Assembly: GCF_023055435.1 (NCBI RefSeq)
Contig: NW_025963913.1
Location: 12,772,001 to 12,836,000, forward strand
Direction of reading: 5' to 3'
Origin: Haliotis rufescens
Taxonomy: Eukaryota
DNA: 64,000 bases
In this document: in pieces, positions 46,101 to 64,000 of the stretch
Numbering within the stretch: position 1 is the first letter of the stretch
How the letters are laid out: each line of letters starts with the position of its first letter
Position numbers and translations under genes: made by a program
The notes under the pieces: generated by a model
Told to the model about the DNA's origin: nothing
The model's database searches: none
What the model saw: only the letters and a program-made list of their open reading frames with translations

Positions 46101-49100
46101 AAGCAGTAAAAACTCTTCTATGGCTTGGGTTGTCATTAATGATGTTGCTGTGTGTTGTAGGTGACCTGGACTACGAGAGTGTGTTGTGCATGCCGACATC
46201 AGCAACCCTCCCAAGAGACTACAAGCCACCTCTCATTGTCTTTCCACATGGTGAGGTTACAACAGGGTGTATCACCCTGGAAACATTGTGTCTCCTGAAA
46301 TGTAGTTCATAATTACATTGTAGGTTATTTGTTTGCTAACATTAAAGTTGCCATTGAAAATGATGTCCCATTGTGTTATGCAATATGATGCTTTTGTATA
46401 CCAAGATCAACACACATTCCAACATACCCCATCTTAAGTATGTAAGTAAATCCACCATCTACATATAGTTAGCTGCATAACAGAAATAATATATTTAAAT
46501 TGGTTCTGATTTTATCATAGATCAATATTTTGTATGTTGTAACATCTTCTTGATATCTTCAAATCAGTTGTTTCCCATAGAAATGTTGTTCTGAGTTATT
46601 TATTGTTCGTACCCTGTATATGGGAAGTCTGTTTGTTGTTGCATTGAGATGGATATGTGTGAAGGCTAGTCCACTGTTTCAGGTGGCCCACACACCACGT
46701 TTGACTGCCAGTTCCAGATGTACACAGCAGGCTTCTGTCAGTGTGGATATGCTGTGCTCATGGGTGAGTAGGTCAAGGATATGCTGTGCTCATGGGTGAG
46801 TAGGTCAAGGATATGCTGTGCTCATGGGTGAGAAGGTCAAGGATATACTGTGCTCATGGCTGAGTAGTTCAAGGATATGCTGTTCTCATGGTTGAATAGG
46901 TCTAGGATATGCTGTGCTCATGGGTGAGTAGGTCAAGGATTAACTGTGCTCATGGGTGAGTAGGTGAAGGATATGCTGTGCTCATCAGTGAGTAGGTGAC
47001 AGATATGCTGTTCTCATGGCTGAGTAGGTCAAGCACGGGTATGCTGTTTTCATGGGTGAGCAGGTCACAAGCAGCTTCTATGGCAGAATATAGGTTCAGG
47101 ATAAGGTGACCCCCTTACACATTTGAACGCAAGAAGGTGACGTGGGCTTGGGTGGCCAGGTGCTACAACCTCACAATTCTCTCAATGGATTTTTTTGAAT
47201 GGACACTCCTGATCTGTAAAATTCTGAATTTCCTGCTCAATTAGTTTATGTTATGTTGTCTTTTAATGTTTTAGTGAACTACCGTGGCTCTGTTGGGTTT
47301 GGTCAGAACAGTATTGACTCTCTCCTTGGAAATGTTGGGGATCAAGATGTGAAAGATGTCTGGGTGAGATGGGTAACAGATTTGTTACCTTTCAACAGCA
47401 ATAATTCTTGAAGAGTGACTGAGAACTATTTTCATGTTAAACTGTCAGCAATGTTTCAGCTGCGAGGGGTGTTCATTAAAGATTTCCCCTAAACCACTTT
47501 TAATAGGGTTATCATATTTGGTTGAAATTTCACATGTGTAATGATACATGTATCTATGGGTTATGTCTGAATTTGCAGCACCGAAGTATTAATCTTACCA
47601 CTTTTACAGGTGTTATGATCGAGTAGGGTGTGACAATGGAGCCAGTAGAATACCGAGCAGTGATTAGGTTTTTATATTTGAAAGGTCGCACACCAAAAGA
47701 GACTTTCGATGAAATGAAAGCAACTTATGGGGAAGATGCCCCATCGTATGACGTTGTTAAACACTGGCATCGCCAGTTCAAGTGTGGTCGGACATCTGTG
47801 GAAACAGCTGCCATTCCTGGTCGCCCCCATTGAGCCATTAATGAGGACACTATCCATCAAGTGGAGACCGCCATTTTGGCAGACCGATGTATAACTGTTC
47901 GCCAGTTAGCACAAGATGTCAAGATCAGTGTAGGGTCTGTGGAAAAAATCATCCATGACAATTTGAACATGCATAAGGTGTCTGCACGATGGATTCCCAG
48001 GTTGCTCACATCTTTCCAAAAGCAGGAACGAGTCAATTGCTCAAAGGATCTTTTGGACATGTGCCAAAAAATACAGGCAAACTTTTTTGACAGACTTATC
48101 GCACAAACATGGGTCCATCACTATGATCCTGAGACTAAAGTTCAGTCGATGCAATGGAAGCATGTGGGGTCACCACCCCCAAGGAAGTCACGTGTCCAAC
48201 CAGGGTCATGCTCACGGTGTTTTGGGACCAGCACGGAGTAGTGATGATGGATTTCTTGGCAAAGGGTACCACAATTACAGGAGCTTATTATGCTTCACTG
48301 CTGCGGAAATTGCGGGACGCTATCAAGCTTAAGAGGCGTGGCATGCTGACCAAGGGTGTCCATCTCCTGCAAGACAATGCTCCAGTACACAACACTCTCA
48401 TGTTGCCCAGACAGAAGCGCGGTCCTGTGGCTATGAAATCCTTCCACATCCTCCTTACTCTCCTGACCTTGCACCATCTGACTTCCACCTCTTTCCAACC
48501 ATGAAGTCATTTTTGAAGGGAAAACGTTTCACAGATGATGAAACACTGATTTCTGAAGTCAAGTCCTGGTTTGAGATGCAAAATGAGGGCTTTTACAAGC
48601 GAGGTCTCCATAGTTGCATAAAACGATGGGAGAAGTGTGTAACTCTTGTTGGTTCCTATGTGGAGAAAGACTAATACCTATGCCAAGTTTCATTCCACTA
48701 GGTCCATCGGAAGTGGGTCTGGGGAAATCTTTAATGAACACCCCTATCATTGTTGCCTCTTATAATCATGTCTGGACAAGGCAACCTTGTTGCTGACATA
48801 TCACATATTTTAAACCCCTTAATGAGTTTTTATCCCCTGCCTGGCCAGAATGGCCGAAGGGGGATTATGTTGTGGCGCAGTCCGTCCGTCCCTCTGTCTG
48901 TCCGTCCCACAGAGGGAACTAAGCTTGTGAAATCAACTCCTCCTACAGTTTCCAGAGAATATCCCTGAAACTCTACACACAAGATGTCTACATGTTGATG
49001 ATACGCATATCGCAGTCCCGTTTCATTTCGCCTATTTTTGACAGAGTTACTGCCCCTGTTTTACAGAACTTCATTTGCCTCATTGTGAGAGAGGGTACTA

Positions 49101-52100
49101 AGCTTGTGAAATCAACTCCTCCTACAGTTTTCAGAGAATATCCCTGACACTCTACACACAAGATGTCTACATGTTGATGATACGCCTATCGCAGTCCTGT
49201 TTCATTTCGACTAATTTTGACAGAGTTACTGCCCCTGTTTTATGGAGCTTCATTTGCCTAATTGTGAGAGAGGTACTAAGCATGTGAAATCAACTCCTCC
49301 TCCAGCTTTTAGAGAATATCTCTGACACTCTATACACAAGATGTTGACATGTTGATGATACACATATCGCAGTCACGTTTCATTTCGACTAATTTTGACA
49401 GAGTTACTGCCCTTGTTTTACGGAGCTTCATTTGCCTCATTGTGAGAGAGGGTACTAAGCTTGTGAAATCAACTCCTCCTACAGTTTTCAGAGAATATCC
49501 CTGACACTCTACACACAAGATGTCTACATGTTGATGATACGCATATCGCAGTCCCGTTTCATTTTTGACTAATTTTGACAGAGTTACTGCCCCTGTTTTA
49601 TGGAGCTTCATTTGCCTCATTGTGAGAGAGGGTACTAAGCTTGTGAAATCAACTCCTCCTACAGTTTTCAGAGAATATCCCTGACACTCTACACACAAGA
49701 TGTCTACATGTTGATGATACGCATATCGCAGTCCCGTTTCATTTCGACTAATTTTGACAGAGTTACTGCCCCTGTTTTACGGAGCTTCGTGAAATCTACT
49801 GCTCCAGTTTCCAGAGAATATCACAATATCTAACTGTAACTATAACTATAGTTAGTTTCCTTGTATAAGGCTTTTGTGGGTGAGCTACATCCTTATGGCA
49901 TTAGCATTCAGACTGGATTACTCCCAACAAAATGTTCTGCACAATTGTTTCAAATGCAGTGCCATCTACTGTTGTTATTTCATAAAGTACAAAGAAAATA
50001 TAAACTCATTAAAAAAATTCATGCGGGGGATGTTGTGCTCTCAGAGCACTCTTGTCTTATCTTGAGTTAATCTGCTTTGATATCATACACTATTCAGGCT
50101 GCAGCCACGTCTGTGATTGAGATGGGTGCGGTGGACCCGGAGAGGCTGCTGGTATTTGGTGGTTCACATGGAGGCTTCCTCACAACACATCTGATAGGCC
50201 AGTATCCGGTACGTAGATGTATACTAGCTTCCTCACAATACATCTGATAGGCCAGTATCCGGTACGTAGATGTATACTAGCTTCCTCACAATACATCTGA
50301 TAGGCCAGTATCCGGTACGTAGATGTATACTAGCTTCCTCACAACACATCTGATAGGCCAGTATCCGGTACGTAGATGTATACTAGCTTCCTCACAACAC
50401 ATCTGATAGGCCAGTATCCGGTACGTAGATGTATACTAGCTTCCTCACAACACATCTAATAGGCCAGTATCCGGTACGTAGATGTATACTAGCTTCCTCA
50501 CAACACATCTGATAGGCCAGTATCCGGTACGTAGATGTATACTAGCTTCCTCACAACACATCTGATAGGCCAGTATCCGGTACGTAGATGTATACTAGCT
50601 TCCTCACAATACATCTGATAGGCCAGTATCTGATACGTAGATGTATACTAGCTTCCTCACATTACATCTGATAGGCCAGTATCTGGTATGTAGATGTATA
50701 CTAGCTTCCTCAGAACACATCTGATAGGCCAGTATCCGGTATGTAGATGTATACTAGCTTCCTCACAACACATCTGATAGGCCAGTATCCAGTATGTAGA
50801 TGTATACTAGCTTCCTCACAACACATCTGATATGCCAGTATCCGTTGCGTAGATTTATACTAGCTTCCTCACAACACATCTGATAGGCCAGTATCCGGTA
50901 CGTAGATGTATACTAGCTTCCTCACAACACATCTGATAGGCCAGTATCGGGTACGTAGATGTATACTAGCTTCCTCACAACACATCTGATAGGCCAGTAT
51001 CCGGTACGTAGATGTATACTAGCTTCCTCACAATACATCTGATAGGCCAGTATCTGGTATGTAGATGTATACTAGCTTCCTCACAACACATCTGATAGGC
51101 CAGTATCCGGTATGTAGATGTATACTAGCTTCCTCACAACACATCTGATAGGCCAGTATCCAGTATGTAGATGTATACTAGCTTCCTCACAACACATCTG
51201 ATATGCCAGTAGCCGTTGCGTAGATTTATACTAGCTTCCTCACAACACATCTGATAGGCCAGTATCCGGTACGTAGATGTATACTAGCTTCCTCACAACA
51301 CATCTGATAGGCCAGTATCCGGTACGTAGATGTATACCAGCTTCCTCACAACACATCTGATAGGCCAGTATTCGGTATGTAGATGTATACTAGCTTCCTC
51401 AGAACACATCTGATAGGCCAGTATCCAGTACGTAGATGTATACTAGTTTCCTCACAACACATCTGATAGGCCAGTATCTGGTACGTAGATGTATACTAGC
51501 TTCCTCACAACACATCTGATAGGCCAGTATCTGGTATGTAGATGTATACTAGCTTCCTCAGAACACATCTGATATGCCAGTATCCCTTGCGTAGATTTAT
51601 ACTAGCTTCCTCACAATACATCTGATTGGCCAGTATCCGGTACGTAGATGTATACTAGCTCCCTTACAACTCATCTGATAGGCCAGTATCTGATACGTAG
51701 ATGTATACTAGCTTCCTCACAACACATCTGATAGGCCAGTGTCCGGTATGTAGATGTATACTAGCTTCCTCACAACACATCTGATAGGCCAGTATCCGGT
51801 ACGTAGATGTATACTAGCTTCCTCACAACACATCTGATAGGCCAGTATCGGGTACGTAGATGTATACTAGCTTCCTCACAACACATCTGATAGGCCAGTA
51901 TCCGGTACGTAGATGTATACTAGCTTCCTCACAATACATCTGATAGGCCAGTATCTGGTATGTAGATGTATACTAGCTTCCTCACAACACATCTGATAGG
52001 CCAGTATCCGGTATGTAGATGTATACTAGCTTCCTCACAACACATCTGATAGGCCAGTATCCAGTATGTAGATGTATACTAGCTTCCTCACAACACATCT

Positions 52101-55100
52101 GATATGCCAGTATCCGTTGCGTAGATTTATACTAGCTTCCTCACAACACATCTGATAGGCCAGTATCCGGTACGTAGATGTATACTAGCTTCCTCACAAC
52201 ACATCTGATAGGCCAGTATCCGGTACGTAGATGTATACCAGCTTCCTCACAACACATCTGATAGGCCAGTATTCGGTATGTAGATGTATACTAGCTTCCT
52301 CAGAACACATCTGATAGGCCAGTATCCAGTACGTAGATGTATACTAGTTTCCTCACAACACATCTGATAGGCCAGTATCTGGTACGTAGATGTATACTAG
52401 CTTCCTCACAACACATCTGATAGGCCAGTATCTGGTATGTAGATGTATACTAGCTTCCTCAGAACACATCTGATATGCCAGTATCCCTTGCGTAGATTTA
52501 TACTAGCTTCCTCACAATACATCTGATTGGCCAGTATCCGGTACGTAGATGTATACTAGCTCCCTTACAACTCATCTGATAGGCCAGTATCTGATACGTA
52601 GATGTATACTAGCTTCCTCACAACACATCTGATAGGCCAGTGTCCGGTATGTAGATGTATACTAGCTTCCTCAGAACACATCTGATATGCCAGTATCCCT
52701 TGCGTAGATTTATACTAGCTCCCTCACAACACATCTGATAGGCCAGTATCTGATACGTAGATGTATACTAGTGTCAAAGCTGGACAAAGACGTTCTCTGG
52801 GTCCATGTATTTTATTAATACTGAAGATGGTAGACCTAAACAATAATATACAAACTTTTAATATACTTGGTAACATCATGTATAGCCTTTCATAGATGAT
52901 AATGGTGTATCGTATCTGCATATTACACATGCATATAATAATCATATATGGCTGAAAGTATCAGTTATCATACATTTATATTTCATCATAGTAATACACA
53001 CAGTGTAGTTCTTTTCAATGAACTCAATGCATAAAAGTACAATATAAACATTTGCATGGTAGAAAGTATCTTTTACATACAATGTCAAATGTACCAATAG
53101 CACTCACAGTAACTTCCAGTAAACTAACAGATCCAGTGGGTCTGAACACCTTTATAACAGTTTATATACTAAATAATCTAACTAATTACAAAGTAACTAA
53201 CATAAAGAAAGTATAGACAAACAAATGACAATGTACCCGTTGAGGTTTATAGACCTACCCCCAACTACCTCTGTTACATCTGTAAACGACCGGAATGGGC
53301 TTCCAGGCCTAGTAGGACGTAACTACAATACAACATGCAAAACTGACAATTCCATTCAAATACAGTCTTAGTATTTAACAACTTATCAATGCCTAATTCT
53401 ATAAACCACTCTGAGATTCGAGCCTTATTTAAGTCCCTCGCTTGCACGTGGCATTGAAACGTTAACAAAACGGAACAAAAGAAAAACAATGGAGTAGAAG
53501 TGTATAATTACAGTACAAGGGAAATTCGCGTCTCATGCAGTACAGCATGACCAACGGGAGATAACTGCTTATGGGATAGGTAGCTATAACAGTAGTCACT
53601 ACAACTAAAACCCGTACTTAATTTGTTAATCTCATTACACAATTTAAATATTATGCACTTCTTTGTGCTCACACAACCATTGAGAAAAGAAATGTTGACT
53701 AGGTTACAATTCTACTACTACTATGCTGATGAAAATATGTGTAAGCAATGAAACAGCCTCTCCACGGCGTTCCTATACTGACTATAGTACAGTGGCTGCT
53801 ACAAGATGGTAATTCGATACTTAACACAGTTTCTACAAAATTAAACTTTGCCACTAAAACCATCACAGACAAATGTACTTCTATAGCATCAAACAACAAT
53901 ATATCTGCTAAAGGGGTGTACTTACTCATTGATAAGATAGCTAATTAGAGCTTGTCCAAAACAATGTGCTCTGTGTTGAAACAATGTGCTCGGCTGGCTG
54001 GCTAAAACAATGGAATTGGCCTGAGCGCGAGATGGAGTGGTAAGCACAGCATTTTGGGATATCCCACAGTAATTAACTAAGGCCAGATACGTATTTGTGA
54101 ACTTGTAGGAAATAAACAAATCTTAAAAGGATATGGTTACATTAATGTGACATATAAAATAACTTCTTAATCAGGAATGTTTACAAACATTCCCGAGCAC
54201 AGTCGGAAACTGCCGAAGATGATGTAAGCAAAAGTGCGTGTCTGATAGCTACTTTACACTAGCTTCCTCACAACACATCTGATAGGCCAGTATCCAGTAC
54301 GTGGATGTATACTAGCTTCCTTACAACACATCTGATAGGCCAGTATCCAGTACGTGGATGTATACTAGCTTCCTTACAACACATCTGATAGGCCAGTATC
54401 TGATATGTAGATGTATACTAGCTTCCTCACAATACATCTGATAGGCCAGTCTCTCATATGTAGATGTATACTAGCTTCCTTACAACACATCTGATAGGCC
54501 AGTATCTGATACGTAGATGTATACCAGCTTCCTCACAATGCATCTGATAGGCCAGTATCCGGTACTTAGATGTATACCAGCTTCCTCACAATGCATCTTA
54601 TAGGCCAGTATCCGGTATGTAGATGTATACTAGCTTCCTCACAACACATCTGATAGGCCAGTATCCGGTCTGTAGATGTATACTAGCTTCCTCAGAACAC
54701 ATCTGATATGCCAGTATCCGTTGCAGAGATTTATACTAGCTTCCTCACAACACATCTGATAGGCCAGTATCTGATACGTAGATGTATACTAGCCTCCTCA
54801 CAACACATCTGATAGGCCAGTATCCGGTATGTAGATGTATACTAGCTTCCTCACAACACATCTAATAGGCCAGTATCCGGTATGTAGATGTATACTAGCT
54901 TCCTCACAACACATCTGATAGGCCAGTATCCAGTATGTAGATGTATACTAGCTTCCTCACAACACATCTAATAGGCCAGTATCCAGTACGTAGATGTATA
55001 CTAGCTTCCTCACAACACATCTAATAGGCCAGTATCCAGTACGTAGATGTATACTAGCTTCCTCACAACACATCTGATAGGCCAGTATCTGATACATAGA

Positions 55101-58100
55101 TGTATACTAGCTTCTTCACAACACATCTGATAGGCCAGTATCTGATACGTAGATGTATACTAGCTTCCTCACAACACATCTAATAGGCCAATATCCAGTA
55201 CGTAGATGTATACTAGCTTCCTCACAACACATCTAATAGGCCAGTATCCAGTACGTAGATGTATACTAGCTTCCTCACAACACATCTGATAGACCAGTAT
55301 CCAGTATGTAGATGTATACTAGCTTCCTCACAACACATCTAATAGGCCAGTATCCAGTACGTAGATGTATACTAGCTTCCTCACAACACATCTAATAGGC
55401 CAGTATCTGATACGTAGATGTATACCAGCTTCCTCACAATGCATCTAATAGGCCAGTATCCGGTATGTAGATGTATACTAGCTTCTTCAGAACACATCTG
55501 ATAGGCCAGTATCCGTTACGTAGATGTATACTAGCTTCCTCACAACACATCTGATTGGCCAGTATCCGGTACTTAGATGTATACCAGCTTCCTCAGTAGG
55601 TTTGATAGGTCTGTGTCCTGTTTGTTTGTTTGTTGGTTGGTTGGTTAACGTCGCAGCAATATTCCAGCTATATATAACAGCTGCTATAATCAAGTCTGGA
55701 CCAGACAATCCACTGATTGACGTCATGAGCATCAATCTACGCAATTGGGATATGATGACATGCATCAACCTAGTCAGCGAGTCTGACCAACCAAAAGCAA
55801 TAGTCACCGATGACGACAAACATAGGAGCCATTTACAGCAAGCATGGGTTGCTGAAGACCTGTTCTCTGCTAGGATGTTCAGGGGTCTGTCCTGTTTGTA
55901 GATATATATGCAAGTGAATATTATGCAGACCAAGCTCCACAGCCATACAGTAATTTCTTCAATAACATGAAATGGTTAAAGGAATTGAGGAATAAAGGAT
56001 TATTTTGCAGACAAAATTCAAGAGTGCAGCATGCAGAAATCCTGTGACAGATTTAACCAGTGAGTGATTAACTGTATTGCATTTTTTGAAGTCATATCCT
56101 GTAATAATGTTTTTGACAAAGCTTATTTGTATTGTATGGAATACCGAAACTGAAACTGATTATTTAAATCTATGGCAGTAGTTACTTGACAACCCTTTTA
56201 ATTGCTTTTTCTGCTTCCATGCATTTGCTGATATAATTGAGTTCTTGGCAACAATTTGAAGAAATATGATTTAATGTAATTTTTAGTTTAAACATATTTT
56301 GATCACATGTTATGAAAACAACTGGGCACAAGTTATTACATCCCTTGCCTTCTCCCATAACTTTTCAGAATGTACCTGTGTTTTTTTGTATTTGCGGTAT
56401 CCTAGGGGAAGATTAGATCAATGTCATGTATAAATATTATAAAAGATACATGGGTACAATGTGTGAAGCCCATTCCCGGTGTCCCCCGCTGTGATATTGC
56501 TGGAATATTGCTAAAAGCGGCGTAAAACCAAACTCACTCACTCACTCACAAAAGATACATAGAAGCTTGGGATAAAAGAAAAGTAAGAAGGGTTGATCAT
56601 TAAAAATATTTTCCAGACCCATATTATGCCCAGTCTGGAATCAATGCAGTGGCAAACAGGGCCATTAACCTAGTAATGATGCCTGCATCACAAGTGTTGA
56701 CCTAGTTATAGTGCCATGCATCAAGGGAGTTAACCTAGTTCTGGTTTATGCATCAGAGGAGTTAACCCAGATATGATGCCCACAAAAGGGGAGTTAACCT
56801 AGTTATGATGTCTTCATCAGGATGTTAACCCAGATATGATGCCTGCATCTGGGGAGTTAACCTAGTTATGATGGCTGTGTCAAGGGAGGTAACCTAGTTA
56901 TGATGGCTCAAGCTCCTTCCCAGCGTGTGACACCTTCGTTACACTCTCGGTAACATTGCTGCCACCAGTGTGGGCGCGGCCATTACAAGAATCTTGAAAT
57001 TTGCCCTCCAACCCCATATGTAGTAACGTTTATACTTTTGTTTATGTCTTTGGGAATGCCATCATATTTCAATTTGAAAAGGTTTACCACTGACCATGTT
57101 TTCCAGATGAATTTACTTTGTTGTTTTGATAATCAGATTGCTTCGAGATTGCAGACTAACAAAAAATCAACCAACTTCTCCCTTACATTCTTACTATATC
57201 AATAACACGATAGTTTTAATGAAACAGAAATTCAAATTGACAAACGAAGAAAGTAATTTAGAAGCGATAAGTGTATTCGGCGTCACAACAGTTGTCACTT
57301 GTTTGTAAACAAACAGTCATTCGGTTGCGAATTCAACTCCAAGCATGGTTGTGGCCACCTATTCACAGTGGGGAGTTTTGACTGGTGGCAGCGATAGTAT
57401 AGAGAGCTCCGGGAACGTACTATCGCTGAGAGGAGCTTGATGATGGCTGTGTCAAGGGAGGTAACCTAGTTAATGCATACATCAGGGGAGTTAACCCAGT
57501 TAGGCTACTGTGAAAAGGGTGGTTGTTGAGGAATGTAACATGTGTTTCAGACAAAGCTGCCTGTGGCGACCTGGCAGACAAGTGAGTTCCGTATCACCTT
57601 GTCTGTGTCACACCCACCAGAGCTACATTTAGTGATATGCTGATCACCATGAATAACAGACGGCTTTTACTATTGATAATAACAGTACCAGCTGTTCAGT
57701 ATACCTCTTGAGCGCTCTTGGTTGGTGTATGTGAGTAATGGTAGTTAGGGCTGGGACGGGTAACTCGGGTCCTGCAGTGGGTACCAGGGTAGGGTCAGGT
57801 AATGGAGGGTCTGATACCCAGGTAGTAAATGTGGGGTCATCCCGGCCCTAATGGTGGTATCAGTGGGACCTGTAATGATCAAGGCATTGTCCAGCAGTAC
57901 CAAAGGTATGTGTTCAATTTACCACATTGGTACATTTTGGGAGGCCATTTATTGTGATCGCCACCACATACATGGTTTGTTCAAGCAACGCAGTGAAACT
58001 TGTACTGTAGATCAATTTTTTGCAGATGTCCACTCAAATTATATGGTGAGGAATTTTCCAATGATATCTATGACAGCTGTCAGTATTGAATGTAGCTCTG

Positions 58101-61100
58101 GTGGTGGTAAGACCTTGTGTGGGTATTACTCAGATAGTTGACCAGTTCTGCTTGTGTTTCAGCTATGTATGGAGTGACTGATATTCCAGACTGGTAAGAA
58201 AGCTTCTTGTCAAGCCATTGTGCTGATGAAATCTTATAGTTACCTGAACAATTACACTTTTTTTGTTTTCTTATTTCATTTATTGCAAAGCTTTAGACAT
58301 ATTTCCAAACATATAACCAATATCATCAATGCCATTGTTATTAAACAATCAGTAGGATTCCAGGATATTCCATATGCCAGTTGTAAGGGGGTATCACTAG
58401 TCAGTAGGATGTGTTATAACCTGGCTTCCTAACCTCACAGCTGGGTCAGTGTTATCTCACTTCACAGCTAGATCAGTGTTATCTCACTTCACAGCTAGAT
58501 CAGTGTTATCTCACCTCACAGCTGGGTCAGTGTTATCTCACTTCACAGCTAGATCAGTGTTATCTCACTTCACAGCTAGATCAGTGTTATCTCACCTCAC
58601 AGCTGGGTCAGTGTTATCTCACTTCACAGCTAGATCAGTGTTATCTCACTTCACAGCTAGATCAGTGTTATCTCACTTCACAGCTAGATCAGTGTTATCT
58701 CAATTCACAGCTAGATCAGTGTTATCTCACTTCACAGCTAGATCAGTGTTATCTCACTTCACAGCTAGATCAGTGTTATCTCACCTCACAGCTAGATCAG
58801 TGTTATCTCACTTCACAGCTAGATCAGTGTTATCTCACTTCACAGCTAGATCAGTGTTATCTCACTTCACAGCTAGATCAGTGTTATCTCACTTAACAGC
58901 TAGATCAGTGTTATCTCACCTCACAGCTAGATCAGTGTTATCTCACTTCACAGCTAGATCAGTGTTATCTCACTTCACAGCTAGATCAGTGTTATCTCAC
59001 TTCACAGCTGGATCAGTGTTATCTCACCTCACAGCTAGATCAGTGTTATCTCACTTCACAGCTAGATCAGTGTTATCTCACTTCACAGCTAGATCAGTGT
59101 TATCTCACTTCACAGCTAGATCAGTGTTATCTCACTTCACAGCTAGATCAGTGTTATCTCACTTCACAGCTAGATCAGTGTTATCTCACCTCACAGCTAG
59201 ATCAGTGTTATCTCACTTCACAGCTAGATCAGTGTTATCTCACTTCACAGCTAGATCAGTGTTATCTCACTTCACAGCTAGATCAGTGTTATCTCACTTC
59301 ACAGCTGGATCAGTTTTATCTCACCTCACAGCTGGATCAGTGTTATCTCACCTCACAGCTGGATCAGTGTTATCTCACCTCACAGCTGGGTCAGTGTTGT
59401 TATCTCATCTCACAGCTGGGTCAGTGTTATCTCACCCTCACAGCTGGGTCAGTGTCATCTCACCTCACAGCTGGTCAATGTTATCTTACCTCAGAGCTGG
59501 GTCAGTTTTATCACAGTTGGATCAGTGTTATCTCACCTCACAGCTGGATCAGTTTTATCTCACATGACAGCTGGGTCAGTGTTATCTCACCCTCACAACT
59601 GGGTCAGAGTAATCTCACCTGACAGCTGGATCAAAGTTATCTCACCCTCACAGCTGGGTCAGTGTTATCTCACCTCACAGCTGGGTCAGTGTTATCTCAC
59701 CTCACAGCTGGGTCAGTGTTATCTCACCTCACAACATGGTCAGTGTTATCTCACCTCACAGCTGGGTCAGTGTCATCTCACCTCACAGCTGGGTCAATGT
59801 TATCTTACCTTAGAGCTGGGTCAGTTTTATCACAGCTGGATCAGTGTTATCATACCCTCACAGCTGGGTCAGTGTCATCTCACCTCACAGCTGGGTCAAT
59901 GTTAACATACCTCAGAGCTGGGTCAGTTTTATCACAGTTGGATCAGTGTTATCTCACCTCACAGCTGGATCAGTTTTATCTCACATGACAGCTGGGTCAG
60001 TGTTATCTCACCTCAGAGCTGGGTCAGTGTTATCTCACCTCACAACATGGTCAGTGTTATCTCACCTCACAGCTGGGTCAGTGTCATCTCACCTCACAGC
60101 TGGGTCAATGTTATCTTACCTTAGAGCTGGGTCAGTTTTATCACAGCTGGATCAGTGTTATCATACCCTCACAGCTGGGTCAGTGTCATCTCACCTCACA
60201 GCTGGGTCAATGTTAACATACCTCAGAGCTGGGTCAGTTTTATCACAGCTGGATCAGTGTTATCTCACCTCAGAGCTGGGTCAGTGTTATCTCACACTCA
60301 CAACTGGGTCAGTGTTATCTCACCTCAGAGCTGGGTCAGTGTTATCCCACCTCACAACATGGTCAGTGTTATCTCACACTCACAGCTGGGTCAGTGTTAT
60401 CTCACCTCACAGCTGGGTCAGTGTTATCTCACACTCACAGCTGGGTCAGTTTTATCACAGCTGGGTCAGTGTTATCTCACTCTTACCGCTGGGTCAGTTT
60501 TATCGCACCTCAGAGCTGGGTCAGTATTATCTCCTCAGAGCTTGGTCTGTTTTATCTCACCCACACAGGTGGGACAATGTTATCTCACCTTACAGCTGGA
60601 TCAGTGTTATCTCACCTCAGAGCTCGATAAGTGTTATCTCACCGCACAGGTGGGTGGGTCAGTGTTATCTCACCTCACAGCTGGATCAGTGTTATCTCAC
60701 CTCACAGCTGGGTCAGTGTTATCTCACTCTCACAGCAGGGTCAGTGTTATCCCACCCTCACAGTTGGATCAGTGATATCTCATCCTCACAGCAGGGTCAG
60801 TGTTATCTCACCTCACAGCTGGGTCAGTGTTATCGCACCTAACAGTTGGGTCAATGTTAACGTACCTCAGAGCTGGGTCAGTTTGATCACAGTTGGATCA
60901 GTGTTATCTCACCTCAGAGCTGGGTCAGTGTTATCTCACACTCAAAACTGGGTCAGTGTTATTTCACCTCAGAGCTGGGTCAGTGTTATCTCACCTCACA
61001 GCAGTGTCAGTGTTATCTCACACTCACAGCTGGGTCAGTGTTATCTCACACTCACAGCTGGGTCAGTGTTATCTCACCTCACAGCTGGGTCAGTGTTATC

Positions 61101-62176
61101 TCACTCTCACCACTGGATCAGTGTTACCTCACACTCAGAGCTGGGTCAGTGTTATCTCACACTCACAACTGGGTCAGTGTTATCTTACCTCACAGCTGGA
61201 TCAGTGTTATCTCCTCAGAGCTGGGTCAGTATTATCTCCTCAGAGCTTGGTCCGTTTTATCTCACCCACACAGGTGGGTCAATGTTATCTCACCTTACAG
61301 CTTGGTCAGTTTTATCCCACACTCACAGCTGGATAAGTGTTATCTCACCTCACAGCTGGATAAGTGTTATCTCACCTCACAGGTGGGTCAGTGTTATCTC
61401 TCCTCACAGCTGGGTCAGTGTTATCTCACCTCACAGCTGGGTCAGTTTTATCCCAACTCATAGCTAGGTCAGTGTTATCTCACCTCACAGCTGAATCAGG
61501 GTTGTCTCACCCTCACAGCTGGATAAGTGTTATCATACCCTCACAGCAGGGTCAATGTTATCTCACCTCACAGCAGGGTCAGTGTTATCTCTCCTCACAC
61601 CTGGATCAGTGTTATCTCACCTCACAGGTGGGTCAGTGTTATCTCACTCTCACAGCAGGGTCAGTGTTATCTCACCTCACAGCTGGGTCAGTGTTATCTC
61701 ACCTAACAGCTTGTTTGTTTGTTTCGTGTTTAATACCACACACAATTCCAGCTATATGACGGTGGTCTGTAAATGATCGAATCTGGACCAAACAATCCAG
61801 TGATTGACATTGTGAGCATCAATCCATGCAATTGGAATATGATGACATGCATCAAACCAAGTCAGCGAGTCTGACCACCCGATCCCTTGAGTCACCTCTT
61901 ACAACAAGCATAGTTGCCTTTTACGGCAAGCATGGGTTGCTGGAGACCTGTTCTACCCTGGATCTTCACGGGTCCACCTCACAGCTGGGTCAGTGTTATT
62001 CAGCCTCACTGCTGAGGTATTGCAATTGATATCCTATTTGCCTATTCTGTGCAAAATTTCTTTTCACATGCAGGGTGTTTGAAGAGATAGGACAACAGTT
62101 TGAGTTCACATCACTGTCCAGTGCTGAGATCCTAGGGGAACTATGGACGAGATCTCCCCTCAGCTATGTCAGCCAG
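28061..62176 (+). CDS. APEH: acylamino-acid-releasing enzyme (acylpeptide hydrolase, peptidase S9C), 3'-partial; 21 coding exons, 656 codons in window
   Basis: All introns GT-AG with consistent phases; motifs [62 protein letters not shown] (catalytic Ser), RNPV, TDIPDW, SPLSY; the catalytic Asp/His exons are expected beyond 64000. Confidence 0.95.
29772..29846 (+). pseudogene. degenerate tRNA-like sequence (SINE head or tRNA pseudogene)
   Basis: A-box TAGCTCAGTCGG, anticodon-like stem tcggg-ctaacaa-tccga, GAGTTCG; acceptor and T stems pair poorly. Confidence 0.5.
30118..30190 (-). pseudogene. degenerate tRNA-Arg(TCG)-like sequence (SINE head or pseudogene)
   Basis: Minus strand TGGTCATGTGGACAAGGCGTCCAACCTCGGATCAGAAGG...GGTTGGAATCCC resembles eukaryotic tRNA-Arg; T-loop and stems mutated. 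Confidence 0.5.
30352..31891. mobile_element. foldback / long-TIR DNA element, right end truncated at a SINE
   Basis: Arms 30420..30784 and 31565..31891 are reverse complements with internal ~38-bp subrepeats; left boundary approximate. Confidence 0.75.
31892..32341 (+). mobile_element. full-length tRNA-derived SINE with Meta-like core
   Basis: A-box TGGTCTAGAGG, B-box GGTTCGATCCC, core gtcataccaaaagac...tacttgttgttaccctg...gcattaagg, tail gaaatattgttcaaagtggctttaaac + (CACT)n. Confidence 0.8.
32508..32740 (+). CDS. APEH: APEH exon 2
   Basis: [14 protein letters not shown]...WSQRDL...; tacag / gtaaga. Confidence 0.9.
33441..33531 (+). CDS. APEH: APEH exon 3
   Basis: [14 protein letters not shown]...EEKQYFE; gtaagg. 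Confidence 0.92.
33927..34005 (+). CDS. APEH: APEH exon 4
   Basis: [12 protein letters not shown]...[10 protein letters not shown]; gtaagg. Confidence 0.92.
34089..34500. mobile_element. older hAT-type MITE
   Basis: Ends tagggctg / cagtccta; flanks ctagactg / ctaggatg (8 bp, 2 mismatches). Confidence 0.55.
34619..34761 (+). CDS. APEH: APEH exon 5
   Basis: [21 protein letters not shown]...; gtaaga. Confidence 0.93.
35404..35541 (+). CDS. APEH: APEH exon 6
   Basis: [14 protein letters not shown]...ISAGQ; gtaaga. Confidence 0.93.
35827..35918 (+). CDS. APEH: APEH exon 7
   Basis: [30 protein letters not shown]; gtcagt. Confidence 0.93.
36200..36240 (+). CDS. APEH: APEH exon 8
   Basis: [13 protein letters not shown]; gtaagt. 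Confidence 0.9.
36280..37097. repeat. 39-bp minisatellite, ~21 copies, filling APEH intron 8
   Basis: Unit gtgtcagtgtgttgtgccttggtatccttgatgttactc. Confidence 0.95.
37161..37282 (+). CDS. APEH: APEH exon 9
   Basis: [14 protein letters not shown]...HSQCSRLMM; gtcagt. Confidence 0.92.
37535..37592 (+). CDS. APEH: APEH exon 10
   Basis: [19 protein letters not shown]; gtttgt. Confidence 0.9.
37930..38030 (+). CDS. APEH: APEH exon 11
   Basis: [16 protein letters not shown]...FWRSRQ; gtgagt. Confidence 0.92.
37979..39346 (+). repeat. 73-bp tandem array made of the last 52 nt of exon 11, the donor and 21 nt of intron (~18-20 copies)
   Basis: Unit gttacctggagggagggagatagtgctgactaccttctggaggagtagacag|gtgagttacctagacgagggt; copy 1 is the real exon end. 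Confidence 0.95.
39632..39724 (+). mobile_element. 5'-truncated SINE (3' ~90 bp) with (ACTC)n tail
   Basis: 15-bp TSD ccagtgagggaatag; near-identical copy at 56452. Confidence 0.85.
39857..39908 (+). CDS. APEH: APEH exon 12
   Basis: [17 protein letters not shown]; tcgcag / gtattt. Confidence 0.88.
40712..41186. mobile_element. MITE (family B), copy 2, inverted relative to 17168
   Basis: TIR cagtgttcccg / cgggaacgctg; 6-bp TSD gtcttg. Confidence 0.85.
41972..42060 (+). CDS. APEH: APEH exon 13
   Basis: [29 protein letters not shown]; gtatgt. Confidence 0.88.
43361..43617 (-). mobile_element. SINE-like repeat family A
   Basis: (GTTT)n tail plus blocks shared with four other copies. Confidence 0.85.
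44729..44858 (+). CDS. APEH: APEH exon 14
   Basis: [12 protein letters not shown]...RVHVQY; gtgagc. Confidence 0.9.
45693..46007 (+). mobile_element. SINE-like repeat family A with a duplicated 5' segment
   Basis: Reverse complement of the other copies; tgaagatc...cttcagcaac occurs twice; (AAAC)n tail. Confidence 0.85.
46161..46250 (+). CDS. APEH: APEH exon 15
   Basis: [11 protein letters not shown]...PPLIVFPH; gtgagg. Confidence 0.93.
46683..46763 (+). CDS. APEH: APEH exon 16
   Basis: [27 protein letters not shown]; gtgagt. Confidence 0.94.
46745..47067 (+). repeat. 32-bp tandem array made of the last 19 nt of exon 16, the donor and 13 nt of intron (~10 copies)
   Basis: Unit ggatatgctgtgctcatgg|gtgagtaggtcaa. 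Confidence 0.95.
47275..47363 (+). CDS. APEH: APEH exon 17
   Basis: [30 protein letters not shown]; gtgaga. Confidence 0.95.
47463..48747 (+). mobile_element. full-length but inactivated mariner (DD34D) transposon
   Basis: TIRs aggggtgttcattaaagatttcccc at both ends; transposase 47636..48674 with [32 protein letters not shown]; stop at 47831, frameshifts, first catalytic D region apparently deleted. Confidence 0.93.
48826..49856 (+). mobile_element. Helentron-associated (HINE/DINE-1-like) element carrying ~5 tandem ~180-bp cores
   Basis: 5' ttatcccc...ggggatta hairpin, (GTCC/GTCT)n microsatellite, then repeats with actaagc at 48918, 49097, 49274, 49454, 49634; family assignment inferred from architecture. 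Confidence 0.7.
50098..50208 (+). CDS. APEH: APEH exon 18 (catalytic Ser, GGSHGG)
   Basis: [37 protein letters not shown]; gtacgt. Confidence 0.95.
50174..55594 (+). repeat. 53-bp tandem array made of the last 35 nt of exon 18, the donor and 18 nt of intron (~49 + ~25 copies, split by a 1.5-kb insertion)
   Basis: Unit gcttcctcacaacacatctgataggccagtatccg|gtacgtagatgtatacta. Confidence 0.96.
52772..54258 (-). mobile_element. probable solo LTR inserted in the 53-bp array
   Basis: TGTcaaag...ctttACA ends, 4-bp TSD ctag precisely splitting one unit, AATAAA on the minus strand ~40 bp from its 3' end, no convincing ORF. Confidence 0.7.
55619..55888 (-). mobile_element. SINE-like repeat family A
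   Basis: (GTTT/GTTG)n tail and shared blocks. Confidence 0.85.
56011..56059 (+). CDS. APEH: APEH exon 19
   Basis: [16 protein letters not shown]; ttttgcag / gtgagt. Confidence 0.93.
56452..56549 (+). mobile_element. 5'-truncated SINE with (ACTC)n tail
   Basis: 11-bp TSD aaaagatacat; same family as 39632. Confidence 0.85.
56660..57505. repeat. degenerate ~33-bp minisatellite (ggagttaacctagttatgatg...), interrupted by a MITE
   Basis: Recurrent ttaacc(t/c)ag motif about every 33 bp, resuming after 57440. Confidence 0.75.
56909..57439. mobile_element. non-autonomous DNA element with 9-bp TSD (Mutator-like)
   Basis: Ends caagctcct / aggagcttg with imperfect ~60-bp TIRs (gctgccaccagt shared); atgatggct on both flanks. 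Confidence 0.75.
57551..57581 (+). CDS. APEH: candidate alternative (mutually exclusive) APEH microexon 20a
   Basis: tgtgtttcag acceptor, 31 nt, phase 1 to 2, donor gtgagt; encodes [11 protein letters not shown] in place of [11 protein letters not shown]. Confidence 0.6.
57746..57850. mobile_element. 105-bp hAT-type mini-MITE
   Basis: TIR tagggctgggac / atcccggcccta; flanks atggtagt / atggtggt; a related end lies at 30065..30090. Confidence 0.7.
58163..58193 (+). CDS. APEH: APEH exon 20 (20b, canonical TDIPDW)
   Basis: tgtgtttcag acceptor, 31 nt, [10 protein letters not shown], gtaaga. Confidence 0.93.
58432..62003. repeat. 27-bp minisatellite, >100 copies, in APEH intron 20
   Basis: Unit tcacagct(a/g)g(a/g)tcagtgttatctcac(t/c); homogeneous at 58455-59300, degenerate distally; SINE inserted near the end. 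Confidence 0.95.
61711..61974 (-). mobile_element. SINE-like repeat family A inserted into the 27-bp array
   Basis: Shared blocks; the array unit resumes at 61975. Confidence 0.85.
62074..62176 (+). CDS. APEH: APEH exon 21
   Basis: [34 protein letters not shown]; gtatgg. Confidence 0.93.
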
Positions 62177-64000
62177 GTATGGTGTGCTTCCCTCAGTTAC
62201 ATCAGCCAGGTACACAGTGTGTCTCCCCTCAGTTACATCAGCCAGGTACACAGTGTGTCTCCCCTCAGTTACATCAGCCAGGTACACAGTGTGTCTCCCC
62301 TCAGTTACAACAACCAGGCACACAGTGTGTCCCCCGCTCAGTTACATCAGCCAGGCACACAGTGTGTCTCCCCTCAGATACATCAGCCAGGTACACAGTG
62401 TGTCTCCCCTCAGTTACATGAGCCAGGTACTGTGTGTCTCCCCTCAGTTACATCAGCCAGGCACACAGTGTGTCTCCCCTCAGTTACATCAGCCAGGTAC
62501 ACAGTGTGTCTCCCCTCAGTTACATCAGCCAGGTACTGTGTGTCTCCCCTCAGTTACATCAGCCAGGTACACAGTGTGTCTCCCCTCAGTTACATCAGCC
62601 AGGTACACAGTGTGTCTCCCCTCAGTTACAACAACCAGGCACACAGTGTGTCCCCCGCTCAGTTACATCAGCCAGGCACACAGTGTGTCTCCCCTCAGAT
62701 ACATCAGCCAGGTACACAGTGTGTCTCCCCTCAGTTACATGAGCCAGGTACTGTGTGTCTCCCCTCAGTTACATCAGCCAGGCACACAGTGTGTCTCCCC
62801 TCAGTTACATCAGCCAGGTACACAGTGTGTCTCCCCTCAGTTACATCAGCCAGGTTCACAGTGTGTCTCCCCTCAGTTACATCAGCCAGGTACTGTGTGT
62901 CTCCCCTCAGTTACATCAGCCAGGTACACAGTGTGTCTCCCCTCAGTTACATGAGCCATGTACACAGTGTGTCTCCCCTCAGTTACATCAGCCAGGTACT
63001 GTGTGTCTCCCCTCAGTTACATCAGCCAGGTACACAGTGTGTCTCCCCTCAGTTACATGAGCCATGTACACAGTGTGTCTCCCCTCAGTTACATCAGCCA
63101 GGTACTGTGTGTCTCCCCTCAGTTACATCAGCCAGGTACACAGTGTGTCTCCCCTCAGTTACATCAGCCAGGTATACAGTGTGTCTCCCCTCAGTTACAT
63201 CAGCCAGGTACACTGTGTGTCTCCCCTCAGTTACATCAGCCAGGTACACGTGTGTCTCCCCTCAGTTACATCAGCCAGGTGCACAGTGTGTCTCCCCTCA
63301 GTTACATCAGCCAGGTACACACTGTGTCTCCCCTCAGTTACATCAACCAGGTACACACTGTGTCTCCCCCCAGTTACAACAACCAGGTACACAGTGTGTC
63401 TCCCCTCAGTTACATCAGCCAGGTACACAGTGTGTCTCCCCTCAGTTACATCAACCAGGTACACACTGTGTCTCCCCTCAGTTACATCAGCCAGGTACAC
63501 AGTGTGTCTCCCCCCAGTTACATCAGCCAGGTACACAGTGTGTCTCCCCCCAGTTACAACAACCAGGTACACAGTGTGTCTCCCCCCAGTTACATCAGCC
63601 AGGTACACAGTGTGTCTCCCCTCAGTTACATCAGCCAGGTACACAGTGTGTCTCCCCTCAGTTACATCAGCCAGGTACACAGTGTGTCTCCCCTCAGTTA
63701 CATCAGCCAGGTACACAGTGTGTCTCCCCTCAGTTACAACAACCAGGTACACAGTGTGTCTCCCCTCAGTTACATCAGCCAGGTACACAGTGTGTCTCCC
63801 CTCAGTTACATCAGCCAGGCACACAGTGTGTCTCCCCCCAGTTACATCAGCCAGGTACACAGTGTGTCTCCCCTCAGTTACATCAACCAGGTACACAGTG
63901 TGTCTCCCCTCAGTTACATGAGCCAGGTACTGTGTGTCTCCCCTCAGTTACATCAGCCAGGTACACAGTGTGTCTCCCCTCAGTTACATCAGCCAGGTAC
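62153..64000 (+). repeat. 36-bp tandem array made of the last 24 nt of exon 21, the donor and 12 nt of intron (~50 copies, runs off the window)
   Basis: Unit tctcccctcagttacatcagccag|gtacacagtgtg, with 33-35-bp variants. Confidence 0.95.

What the first reader, a model, noticed from the sequence alone, without database searches (positions are those of the whole stretch)
57551..58193. Candidate mutually exclusive 31-nt microexon pair next to the APEH active site
Seen: two segments 612 bp apart share the acceptor tgtgtttcag, the length (31 nt), the phases (1 to 2) and strong donors (gtgagt, gtaaga). One encodes the conserved [11 protein letters not shown]. The other encodes [11 protein letters not shown], keeping the D-x-x-D spacing but replacing the conserved Trp. 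Including both or neither shifts the frame, the classic signature of mutually exclusive duplicated exons. Inference: the segment lies about 30-40 residues after the catalytic Ser, in a part of the S9 hydrolase fold likely to line the substrate pocket, so switching could change specificity or activity.
Basis: partly seen in the sequence, partly recalled or inferred. Interest (0 to 1): 0.8.

Follow-up and report, generated by a model that had tools for sequence, protein, structure and literature searches.

The report
Real alternative microexon pair in abalone APEH
The two 31-base segments are a genuine pair of mutually exclusive microexons in an abalone acylpeptide hydrolase gene; the same swap occurs in other snails and a ribbon worm, and it replaces a tryptophan that lines the enzyme's substrate pocket.

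Summary
In detail: exon A (57551-57581) and exon B (58163-58193) are both 31 nt, in phase 1 to 2, and share the acceptor TGTGTTTCAG. That 10-mer occurs only at these two places in the window. Sequence alone was weak evidence: the exon bodies are 11/31 identical (p about 0.1), and a third equally good 31-nt pseudo-exon sits at 57700.

External evidence settles it. H. asinina has the same pair (NKASCGDIPDK). Same-length isoform pairs that differ only at this position also exist in Pomacea, Littorina and the nemertean Lineus. Aplysia and a cDNA-like JGI contig carry only the A type. A truncated Pomacea isoform reads as A followed by frameshifted B.

A-type exons share K/R at position 2, Asp at position 7 and no Trp at position 11. 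Published porcine APEH structures place that Trp (Trp628) in the S1 pocket, and the retained Asp (Asp624) pairs with Arg677.

In four RNA-like runs only the exon 19-to-B junction was assembled, so A is a minor or tissue-restricted form there. No paper describes this event. I file it as a new member of a known kind, possibly an ancient specificity switch.

The parts
50098..50208 (+). Catalytic-serine exon ([37 protein letters not shown]), phase 0 to 0
   Evidence: tblastn to Gigantopelta and Haliotis APEH proteins; GGSHGG motif.
56011..56059 (+). Constitutive exon '19' ([16 protein letters not shown] plus 1 nt), donor CCA|gtgagt. It encodes the NPV segment; the Val is equivalent to S1-pocket Val613 of the pig enzyme.
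   Evidence: The joint 56059->58163 is present in all four runs.
57541..57550 (+). Acceptor of exon A, TGTGTTTCAG. Its polypyrimidine tract is weak (9 of 18 pyrimidines at -20..-3).
   Evidence: pyrimidines counted by hand from the printed sequence.
57551..57581 (+). Alternative microexon A (31 nt, phase 1 to 2) encoding [11 protein letters not shown]. It keeps the two Asp residues and replaces the pocket Trp with Lys and the Met with Lys.
   Evidence: The peptide is identical to residues 612-622 of H. rufescens RefSeq isoform X2, P0157. The region is single copy in its own genome.
57582..57587 (+). Donor of exon A, GTGAGT
57614..57629 (+). Left arm of a 16-nt perfect inverted repeat (CCACCAGAGCTACATT), 32 nt downstream of exon A. 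The extended arm is 57605-57629.
   Evidence: I2. The stem appears in both the MFE and centroid folds of the A-B intron. The duplex of downA with upB has z = -2.8, 0 of 100 shuffles. Single copy in the genome.
57762..57860 (.). Dispersed repeat fragment inside the A-B intron; not part of the exon pair
   Evidence: 881 first-look candidates in the own genome, all on this piece. Raised depth, bins 57690-57879.
58089..58104 (+). Right arm of the inverted repeat (AATGTAGCTCTGGTGG), ending 58 nt upstream of exon B. The extended arm is 58089-58113.
58153..58162 (+). Acceptor of exon B, TGTGTTTCAG. Its polypyrimidine tract is stronger (13 of 18 pyrimidines).
58163..58193 (+). Default microexon B (31 nt, phase 1 to 2) encoding [11 protein letters not shown], the pan-metazoan form that carries the S1-pocket Trp
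   Evidence: Joint 56059->58163 (GT..AG) at depth 15-45 in four runs. 196 B-like segments among the fetched homologues.
58194..58199 (+). Donor of exon B, GTAAGA
62074..62176 (+). Constitutive exon '21' (1 nt plus [34 protein letters not shown]), phase 2 to 0. Its 3' end seeds the 36-bp array that follows.
   Evidence: The end coordinate was corrected by hand.

Best explanation
The window holds most of the acylamino-acid-releasing enzyme (APEH, peptidase family S9C) gene of an abalone, Haliotis rufescens or a very close relative. Exons A and B are a genuine pair of mutually exclusive 31-nt microexons, most likely descended from an old tandem exon duplication.

B encodes the universal segment [11 protein letters not shown] and is the default. 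It has the better polypyrimidine tract and was the only form assembled in four RNA-like runs. A is a minor or condition-restricted alternative.

Shown: because 31 is not a multiple of 3, including both or neither shifts the frame and creates an early stop, with at least two exon junctions still downstream. Only A-only and B-only mRNAs therefore encode full-length enzyme. Inferred: the out-of-frame forms are removed by nonsense-mediated decay.

Shown by alignment and published structures: the A segment keeps the Asp equivalent to pig Asp624, the partner of Arg677 at the S2 site, and the second Asp. It replaces the Trp equivalent to Trp628, which lines and narrows the S1 pocket, with Lys, and the Met at position 2 with Lys.

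Inferred: the A isoform has the same fold but a remodelled S1 pocket that is wider and positively charged. It would therefore prefer different N-acyl P1 residues.

The same A/B choice exists in caenogastropods, heterobranchs and a nemertean. The switch therefore predates the gastropod radiation and may date to early spiralians.
For: - Anatomy, frames and stops.
- Gene identity: tblastn of Haliotis and Gigantopelta APEH proteins maps more than 20 exons on the + strand from 32.5 kb to the window end. Several cleanly bounded exons are 100% identical to H. rufescens. There is one locus of this gene in the own genome.
- Haliotis isoforms: H. rufescens X1/X2 (P0278/P0157, both 726 aa) and H. asinina X1/X2 (P0156/P0275, both 716 aa) differ only in the 11-aa block.
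- Other taxa: Pomacea X1/X2, Littorina X1/X2 and Lineus X1/X2 do the same at the same position. Aplysia P0162 is A type. JGI P0161 is also A type: a 712-aa protein on a 2,932-nt contig, so it is cDNA-like, and it is 73% identical to Aplysia.
- Double inclusion: Pomacea X3 (P0296, 629 aa) reads as the A peptide followed by a frameshifted tail and a stop. I read this as A-plus-B inclusion, which needs transcript evidence and puts A upstream of B there too.
- Orthology of A types: between clades, A types resemble each other more than they resemble B types (mean BLOSUM62 16.6 versus 6.6). They share K/R at position 2, G/S/A at position 6, Asp at position 7, D/E at position 10 and non-Trp at position 11.
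- Structure papers: Trp628 lines the S1 pocket and may shift specificity towards small P1 residues (PMC9749117, PMC9214879). Asp624 pairs with Arg677 at S2 (PMC9214879, PMC12514842).
- Models: AlphaFold2 models of both isoforms are equally confident. Mean pLDDT is 90.9 and 90.3, the 611-620 block scores 80 versus 82, and the secondary structure is identical. The A-form model matches 7px8/7qun at TM 0.90-0.94.
Against: - In four RNA-like contig sets the only exon 19 joint listed was 56059->58163. Depth over exon A (0-7) equals that of the single unspliced contig, against 14-30 at exons 19 and B. Contigs drop rare variants, and 122 joints were not shown.
- RefSeq isoforms are automated models, and I could not see their evidence.
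- A and B bodies in this window are not significantly similar (11/31 nt, 2/11 aa). Homology rests on length, phase, the shared acceptor and the better-preserved DIPD core in H. asinina and Lineus.
- H. cracherodii, H. rubra, bivalve, cephalopod, chiton and annelid models in hand show only B.
- No biochemical data exist for any A-type enzyme.
- AlphaFold2 with a mostly B-type alignment is insensitive to such a swap.
Confidence: 0.8

Rival explanations
1. Exon A is really spliced in and conserved, but the product is a catalytically weak or inactive subunit that modulates the APEH tetramer, or has a non-peptidase role. It is not an enzyme with a new P1 specificity.
For: The Trp is nearly invariant in APEH from cnidarians to mammals and plants, so losing it may cripple the S1 pocket. 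A was undetectable against B in four runs, which fits a low-level regulatory form. The position-11 residue of A types is not conserved (K, T or V), which argues against one defined new pocket chemistry.
Against: The catalytic triad, the oxyanion HGGP motif and the Asp that pairs with Arg677 are all retained. Archaeal acylaminoacyl peptidases lack this narrowing Trp, have a wider S1 pocket and are active (PMC9214879). The conserved basic residue at position 2 suggests selection for a specific property.
Confidence: 0.2
2. The A/B pairs in Haliotis, caenogastropods, heterobranchs and Lineus arose by independent tandem duplications of the same microexon, not from one ancient duplication.
For: Convergent tandem exon duplications in orthologous genes are documented (PMC9741552 abstract; mrp-1 as cited in PMC7434440). 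The Lineus A exon is closest to its own B exon (5/11 identical). No A type is seen in the bivalve, cephalopod, chiton, patellogastropod or annelid models in hand.
Against: All seven A types share K/R at position 2, a small residue at position 6 and loss of Trp. They score higher with each other than with B types across clades (16.6 versus 6.6). The exon order A-then-B is the same in Haliotis and Pomacea.
Confidence: 0.25
3. Segment A is a chance pseudo-exon or splicing noise that automated annotation turned into an isoform, and it has no function.
For: Body similarity to B is not significant. Another strong 31-nt pseudo-exon lies 119 nt downstream of exon A.
Against: The frame, splice sites and 8 of 11 residues are kept in H. 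asinina, whose orthologue is 87-88% identical overall. The same event is annotated independently in three other genera and another phylum, with peptides too divergent to have been projected from one another. A cDNA-like contig encodes a full-length A-type protein.
Confidence: 0.05

Closest known systems
Tandem duplicated exon substitutions (mutually exclusive homologous exons), as catalogued for human, fly and worm genes (PMC9741552, PMC8373072)
   Same: Adjacent exons of equal length and phase. One or the other is used. The isoforms are identical apart from a short homologous block. Key structural residues are kept (here the two Asp). The origin is old.
   Different: Here the exons are microexons of 31 nt. 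The change at a pocket residue is drastic (Trp to Lys, Thr or Val) rather than conservative. The event is in a soluble serine peptidase of molluscs and nemerteans and is not described in any paper I could find.
coq-2 exons 6a/6e in helminths, annelids and molluscs (PMC7434440)
   Same: A mutually exclusive exon pair of equal length remodels the core of an enzyme and changes which substrate it uses. One form is pan-eukaryotic and the other lineage-restricted. It occurs in lophotrochozoans.
   Different: For coq-2 the functional switch (ubiquinone versus rhodoquinone) is shown experimentally. For APEH nothing is known about the A form's activity. The coq-2 exons are longer and differ by two invariant residues.
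Mammalian APEH/AAP (porcine cryo-EM structures 7px8, 7qun, 9gne)
   Same: About 41% identical, with the same fold (TM 0.90-0.94). It has the same GGSHGG, HGGP and DIPDW motifs. Trp628 and Asp624 map onto exon B.
   Different: None of the three porcine APEH structure papers consulted mentions an alternative to the DIPDW segment, and all vertebrate models in hand carry the B type.
Ruditapes philippinarum APEH-like isoforms X1/X2 (P0152/P0089)
   Same: Same gene family in a mollusc, and same-length isoforms produced by swapping one block.
   Different: A different exon: a 40-residue block in the beta-propeller (residues 270-309), not the catalytic-domain microexon. No counterpart was seen in this window.
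RNA-structure-guided exon choice (docking and selector sites; PMC6071210)
   Same: A strong long-range stem (16 perfect base pairs) lies in the intron between the two alternative exons.
   Different: Only one stem was found, not a docking site competing for several selectors. It loops out intron only. No conservation or covariation could be tested.

Membership tests
Mutually exclusive tandem-duplicated exon pair | Neighbouring exons of the same length and the same phases | tested here: met
   Both are 31 nt, phase 1 to 2, 581 nt apart, with no constitutive exon between them.
Mutually exclusive tandem-duplicated exon pair | The two exons are homologous in sequence | tested here: inconclusive
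   In the window they are 11/31 nt (p = 0.10-0.16) and 2/11 aa identical, plus an identical 10-nt acceptor found nowhere else in 64 kb. H. asinina is 4/11 with a shared DIPD core and Lineus is 5/11. Asp at position 7 is invariant in both types.
Mutually exclusive tandem-duplicated exon pair | Mature transcripts carry one exon or the other | tested here: inconclusive
   RefSeq isoform pairs in five species carry A-only and B-only forms, and a cDNA-like A-type contig exists. My own read laying showed only the B junction in four runs. Exon A junction reads in this species were not seen.
Mutually exclusive tandem-duplicated exon pair | Joint inclusion or joint skipping is non-productive | tested here: met
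   Stops arise 16 and 5 codons after exon 19. Pomacea X3 is a truncated 629-aa product that reads as A plus frameshifted B. Decay of such mRNAs is not testable here.
APEH / acylaminoacyl peptidase (MEROPS S9C) | Prolyl-oligopeptidase-type catalytic domain with the GGSHGG nucleophile elbow and HGGP oxyanion motif, plus an N-terminal propeller | tested here: met
   Motifs are present in the exons. The match to porcine APEH has E = 1.7e-183 over the full length. Precomputed Pfam domains include PF00326 and PF19283. The model matches 7px8 at TM 0.91.
Steric-hindrance type of mutual exclusion | The intron between the two exons is too short to be spliced, or the branch point is too close to the upstream donor | tested here: not met
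   The intron is 581 nt. Candidate branch sites (for example ttgac, about 20 nt upstream of B) are near the acceptor; this is by eye only.
U2/U12 spliceosome incompatibility type | One exon flanked by U12-type sites and the other by U2-type sites | tested here: not met
   All four sites are ordinary GT-AG with U2-type consensus, and there is no ATATCC-like donor.
Docking/selector RNA-structure type | One docking sequence able to pair alternatively with a selector next to each variant exon | tested here: inconclusive
   Only one significant pairing was found, 57614-57629 with 58089-58104. Other region pairs were not better than shuffles, except down19/downB at z = -2.2. No orthologous introns were available for a covariation test.

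The most novel reading that the evidence does not exclude
One gene encodes two peptidases. An ancient microexon switch, present before gastropods diversified and possibly in early spiralians, removes the S1-pocket tryptophan of APEH and adds basic residues. This would convert the small-P1 N-acyl-amino-acid-releasing enzyme into a form with a wider, charged pocket and a different substrate range, deployed in particular tissues or conditions. It would be an enzymatic parallel to the coq-2 exon switch.
Probability: 0.4. Interest if true: 0.75.

Novelty: new member of a known kind. Interest (0 to 1): 0.62.

Why it matters
APEH removes N-acylated residues, feeds the proteasome pathway and detoxifies organophosphates and carbapenems. 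Its narrow S1 pocket is thought to set its preference for small residues.

This is a natural, conserved isoform that deletes the pocket tryptophan and keeps the rest of the active site. It gives a ready-made test of what that residue does. It also suggests that molluscs and nemerteans run two APEH specificities from one gene.

The case also adds a clear example of an old mutually exclusive microexon pair in a soluble enzyme in lophotrochozoans, a group with few characterised splicing switches. For annotation, it shows that the RefSeq X2 isoforms are part of a conserved event and not noise.

Tried and rejected
1. My first reading was that A is a chance pseudo-exon next to minisatellite and repeat DNA. 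It rested on weak A/B body similarity, a second pseudo-exon at 57700 and no A junction in four runs. I rejected it after the isoform comparison.
2. A as part of a transposable element: rejected. 57500-57700 is single copy. Only 57762-57860 in the A-B intron is a dispersed repeat.
3. The inverted repeat as the terminal repeats of a MITE: not supported. Both arms are single copy.
4. Paralogues in the own genome for an internal comparison: there are none, only one locus.
I therefore made no DNA-level comparison, dN/dS estimate or stem covariation test.
6. Search for transcript-derived fragments with the A peptide, using an 88-residue part of stored protein P0157: no Haliotis fragments of either form were found, so it is uninformative.
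7. Region-restricted search with H. asinina X2: only 10 candidates, all Haliotis, so it is uninformative.
8. Docking/selector scan with duplex folding: nothing beyond the one stem.
9. AlphaFold2 of both isoforms: indistinguishable, so no help on function.
10. Literature: nothing on an APEH alternative microexon.

I did not search with a spliced model joined by me from the window. Database proteins served instead. One search joined exons only inside a script, to locate stops, and printed no sequence.


Full report
**What is in the sequence.**
Segment A is 57551-57581 and segment B is 58163-58193. Each is 31 nt and each is preceded by TGTGTTTCAG. A is followed by GTGAGT and B by GTAAGA.

Both segments read open in phase 1 to 2 between a 49-nt exon (56011-56059, [16 protein letters not shown]) and the next exon (62074-62176, VFEEIGQQ...SPLSYVSQ). 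I corrected the end of that last exon by hand. The catalytic-serine exon (GGSHGG) is 50098-50208.

A encodes [11 protein letters not shown] and B encodes [11 protein letters not shown]. Both lie 31-41 residues after the serine. Including both exons gives a stop 16 codons after exon 19. Skipping both gives a stop after 5 codons.

**How much of that could be chance.**
- The 10-mer TGTGTTTCAG occurs only at these two places in 64 kb on either strand.
- The exon bodies are only 11/31 identical, which 10-16% of shuffled or random 31-mers reach. The peptides share 2 of 11 residues.
- The + strand has 278 AG-31nt-GT segments, and 183 of them are open in the required frame.
- Of the four with a GTRAG donor and a pyrimidine-rich acceptor, one (57700) lies in the same intron and is clearly unrelated.

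On sequence alone I therefore leaned towards a pseudo-exon.

**The gene.**
A search with the serine exon and then with the Gigantopelta APEH-like protein gave mollusc acylamino-acid-releasing enzymes. tblastn maps more than 20 exons on the + strand from about 32.5 kb to the end of the window. Several cleanly bounded exons are 100% identical to Haliotis rufescens proteins, and identity to H. cracherodii, H. rubra and H. asinina is lower.

The own genome (1.33 Gb) has a single locus of this gene, which continues about 7.4 kb beyond the window. The protein is full-length homologous to porcine APEH (E = 1.7e-183).

**The decisive comparison.**
Cluster members of the Haliotis hits, once aligned, show the following.
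- H. rufescens isoforms X1 (P0278) and X2 (P0157) are both 726 aa and differ only in residues 612-622.
- H. asinina X1/X2 (P0156/P0275, both 716 aa) differ in the same block: [11 protein letters not shown] versus NKASCGDIPDK. The alternative exon therefore keeps its frame, its splice sites and 8 of 11 residues in a species whose orthologue is 87-88% identical overall. There it still carries the DIPD core of exon B.

Looking further, same-length isoform pairs that differ only at this position exist in three more species.
- Pomacea canaliculata: SMVGTTDIISW / FRVWASDSADT.
- Littorina saxatilis: SMFGTTDIQDW / SRVWTSDKPDK.
- The nemertean Lineus longissimus: SMLSVTDIPDW / SKTYTSDIPDV.

Two further proteins carry only the A type. 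The Aplysia californica model has SKSNGADNPET. A 712-aa protein on a 2,932-nt JGI contig has SKASGADNPDK. That contig is too short to hold introns, so it is cDNA-like, and the protein is 73% identical to Aplysia.

Pomacea isoform X3 (629 aa) reads as the A peptide followed by a frameshifted tail and a stop. I interpret this as double inclusion of A and B. Such a model cannot come from protein homology, and it places A upstream of B as in this window.

All seven A types have K/R at position 2 (B has Met), a small residue at position 6 (B has Thr), Asp at position 7 (as in B), D/E at position 10, and K, T or V at position 11 (B has Trp). Between clades, A types score 16.6 with each other, 6.6 with B types, and B types score 40 with each other. 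A is therefore a fast-evolving but recognisable orthologous exon class.

All other metazoan models in hand carry only the B type, including bivalves, cephalopods, a chiton, patellogastropods, annelids, echinoderms, cnidarians and vertebrates. Isoforms hidden inside 90% clusters, and unannotated exons, cannot be excluded.

**RNA evidence in this species.**
One read-laying run was allowed. Four contig sets came from three coded organism labels. Their kind is only guessed, but each contains the spliced joint and so holds cDNA. All four show the GT..AG joint 56059->58163 at depth 15-45.

Unspliced contigs at depth 6-7 run straight through exon A in three runs, and the fourth has nothing there. The bin depth over A equals the depth of that single unspliced contig, so no A-junction contig was laid. 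Two caveats apply: contigs drop rare variants, and 122 joints were not listed.

The fair reading is that B is the default and that A is a minor form or absent in those samples. That fits A's weaker polypyrimidine tract (9 of 18 pyrimidines against 13 of 18 for B). Exon A and its flanks are identical to the window in the organism B contig (X5 record 22, 57462-57755, 0 differences).

**What the swap does to the protein.**
The alignment to porcine APEH puts exon B on Ser618-Trp628. Three papers bear on these residues.
- The meropenem-complex paper lists His325, His588, Val613 and Trp628 as lining the shallow S1 pocket (PMC9749117).
- The first structure paper says the pocket is narrower than in archaeal enzymes because Trp628 lines its lower region. 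It suggests this may shift specificity towards small P1 residues. It also reports that Asp624 salt-bridges the conserved Arg677, which can be released to bind the P2 residue (PMC9214879).
- A 2025 paper calls Asp624 the charge-neutralising partner of Arg677 at the S2 site (PMC12514842).

The A exon therefore keeps Asp624 and Asp627, removes the pocket Trp, and adds one or two basic residues. From memory, not tested here, this Trp corresponds to Trp595 of prolyl oligopeptidase, 41 residues after the serine in both enzymes.

AlphaFold2 models of the two isoforms are equally confident and have identical secondary structure. The A model matches 7px8/7qun at TM 0.90-0.94. This shows compatibility with the fold and nothing more.

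**How exclusivity and choice may work.**
- Shown: the frame rule.
- Not met: steric hindrance (the intron is 581 nt) and U2/U12 incompatibility (all sites are ordinary GT-AG).
- Candidate element: a 16-nt perfect inverted repeat, 57614-57629 with 58089-58104, begins 32 nt after exon A and ends 58 nt before exon B.
  - It forms the closing stem of the A-B intron in both the MFE and centroid folds.
  - It makes the downA/upB duplex better than all 100 shuffles.
  - Both arms are single copy in the genome, so it is not an ordinary MITE.
  - Its role is unknown.

**Comparison with what is known.**
This is a tandem-duplicated-exon substitution event of the kind catalogued in human, fly and worm (PMC9741552). 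Functionally it is closest to the coq-2 exon switch, which changes enzyme substrate choice in helminths, annelids and molluscs (PMC7434440). It differs in three ways: it is a 31-nt microexon pair, it makes a drastic change at a pocket residue, and it sits in APEH.

I found no paper that mentions it. It is present only as automated RefSeq isoforms. I therefore rate it a new member of a known kind.

**Limits.**
- No exon A junction reads were seen for this species.
- The evidence behind the RefSeq models is not visible to me.
- No DNA from other species was available.
One search used a part of stored protein P0157. One search joined exons only inside a script and printed no sequence.

Noticed in passing
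window 36280-37100, 37979-39346, 46745-47067, 50174-55595, 62153-64000: At least three introns of this one gene, and probably five, begin with minisatellite arrays whose unit is the 3' end of the upstream exon plus its GT donor. The three clear cases have units of 32, 53 and 36 bp; the 53-bp unit is ...CATCTGATAGGCCAGTATCCG|GTACGT. These arrays hold many in-register copies of real donor sites. The 73-bp array at 37979-39346 also contains the exon end and a donor. The 39-bp array at 36280-37100 was not compared with its exon.
   Followed up: partly
window 58432-61711: The intron after exon B holds a 3.3-kb array of a 27-bp unit (about 122 copies). Unlike the others, it does not obviously derive from the exon end.
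   Followed up: no
window 56868-57439: A contig of run X1 joins 56867 directly to 57440, across two identical 33-nt copies of a 32-bp minisatellite unit. The 572 bp between them carry an inverted repeat (56944-56969 / 57381-57406) and are high-copy in the RNA-like runs. This is either an insertion polymorphism of a repeat element 111 nt upstream of exon A or a k-mer collapse.
   Followed up: no
window 55695-55884 and 56360-56549; also 61773-61954: Very high word depth (1e4-1e6) in all four RNA-like runs marks abundant dispersed repeats in the intron before exon A. 55686-55866 and 61773-61954 are two copies of one element (81-87% identical), about 6.09 kb apart, each lying shortly upstream of a constitutive exon.
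   Followed up: no
proteins P0152 / P0089 (Ruditapes philippinarum APEH-like X1 / X2): These are two 708-aa isoforms. They differ only in a 40-residue block of the propeller (residues 270-309), which looks like a second, independent mutually exclusive exon pair in a mollusc APEH gene.
   Followed up: partly
window 57700-57730: A third 31-nt open segment with a good acceptor (ccagctgttcag) and a GTGAGT donor lies 119 nt after exon A. Its peptide ([11 protein letters not shown]) has no likeness to A or B. It is useful as a local example of a chance pseudo-exon.
   Followed up: yes
proteins P0274, P0159 (H. asinina): H. asinina has two further APEH-like genes on the same 66-Mb contig as the A/B gene. 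Both models carry only the B-type segment ([11 protein letters not shown]). The genome of this window shows only one locus.
   Followed up: partly
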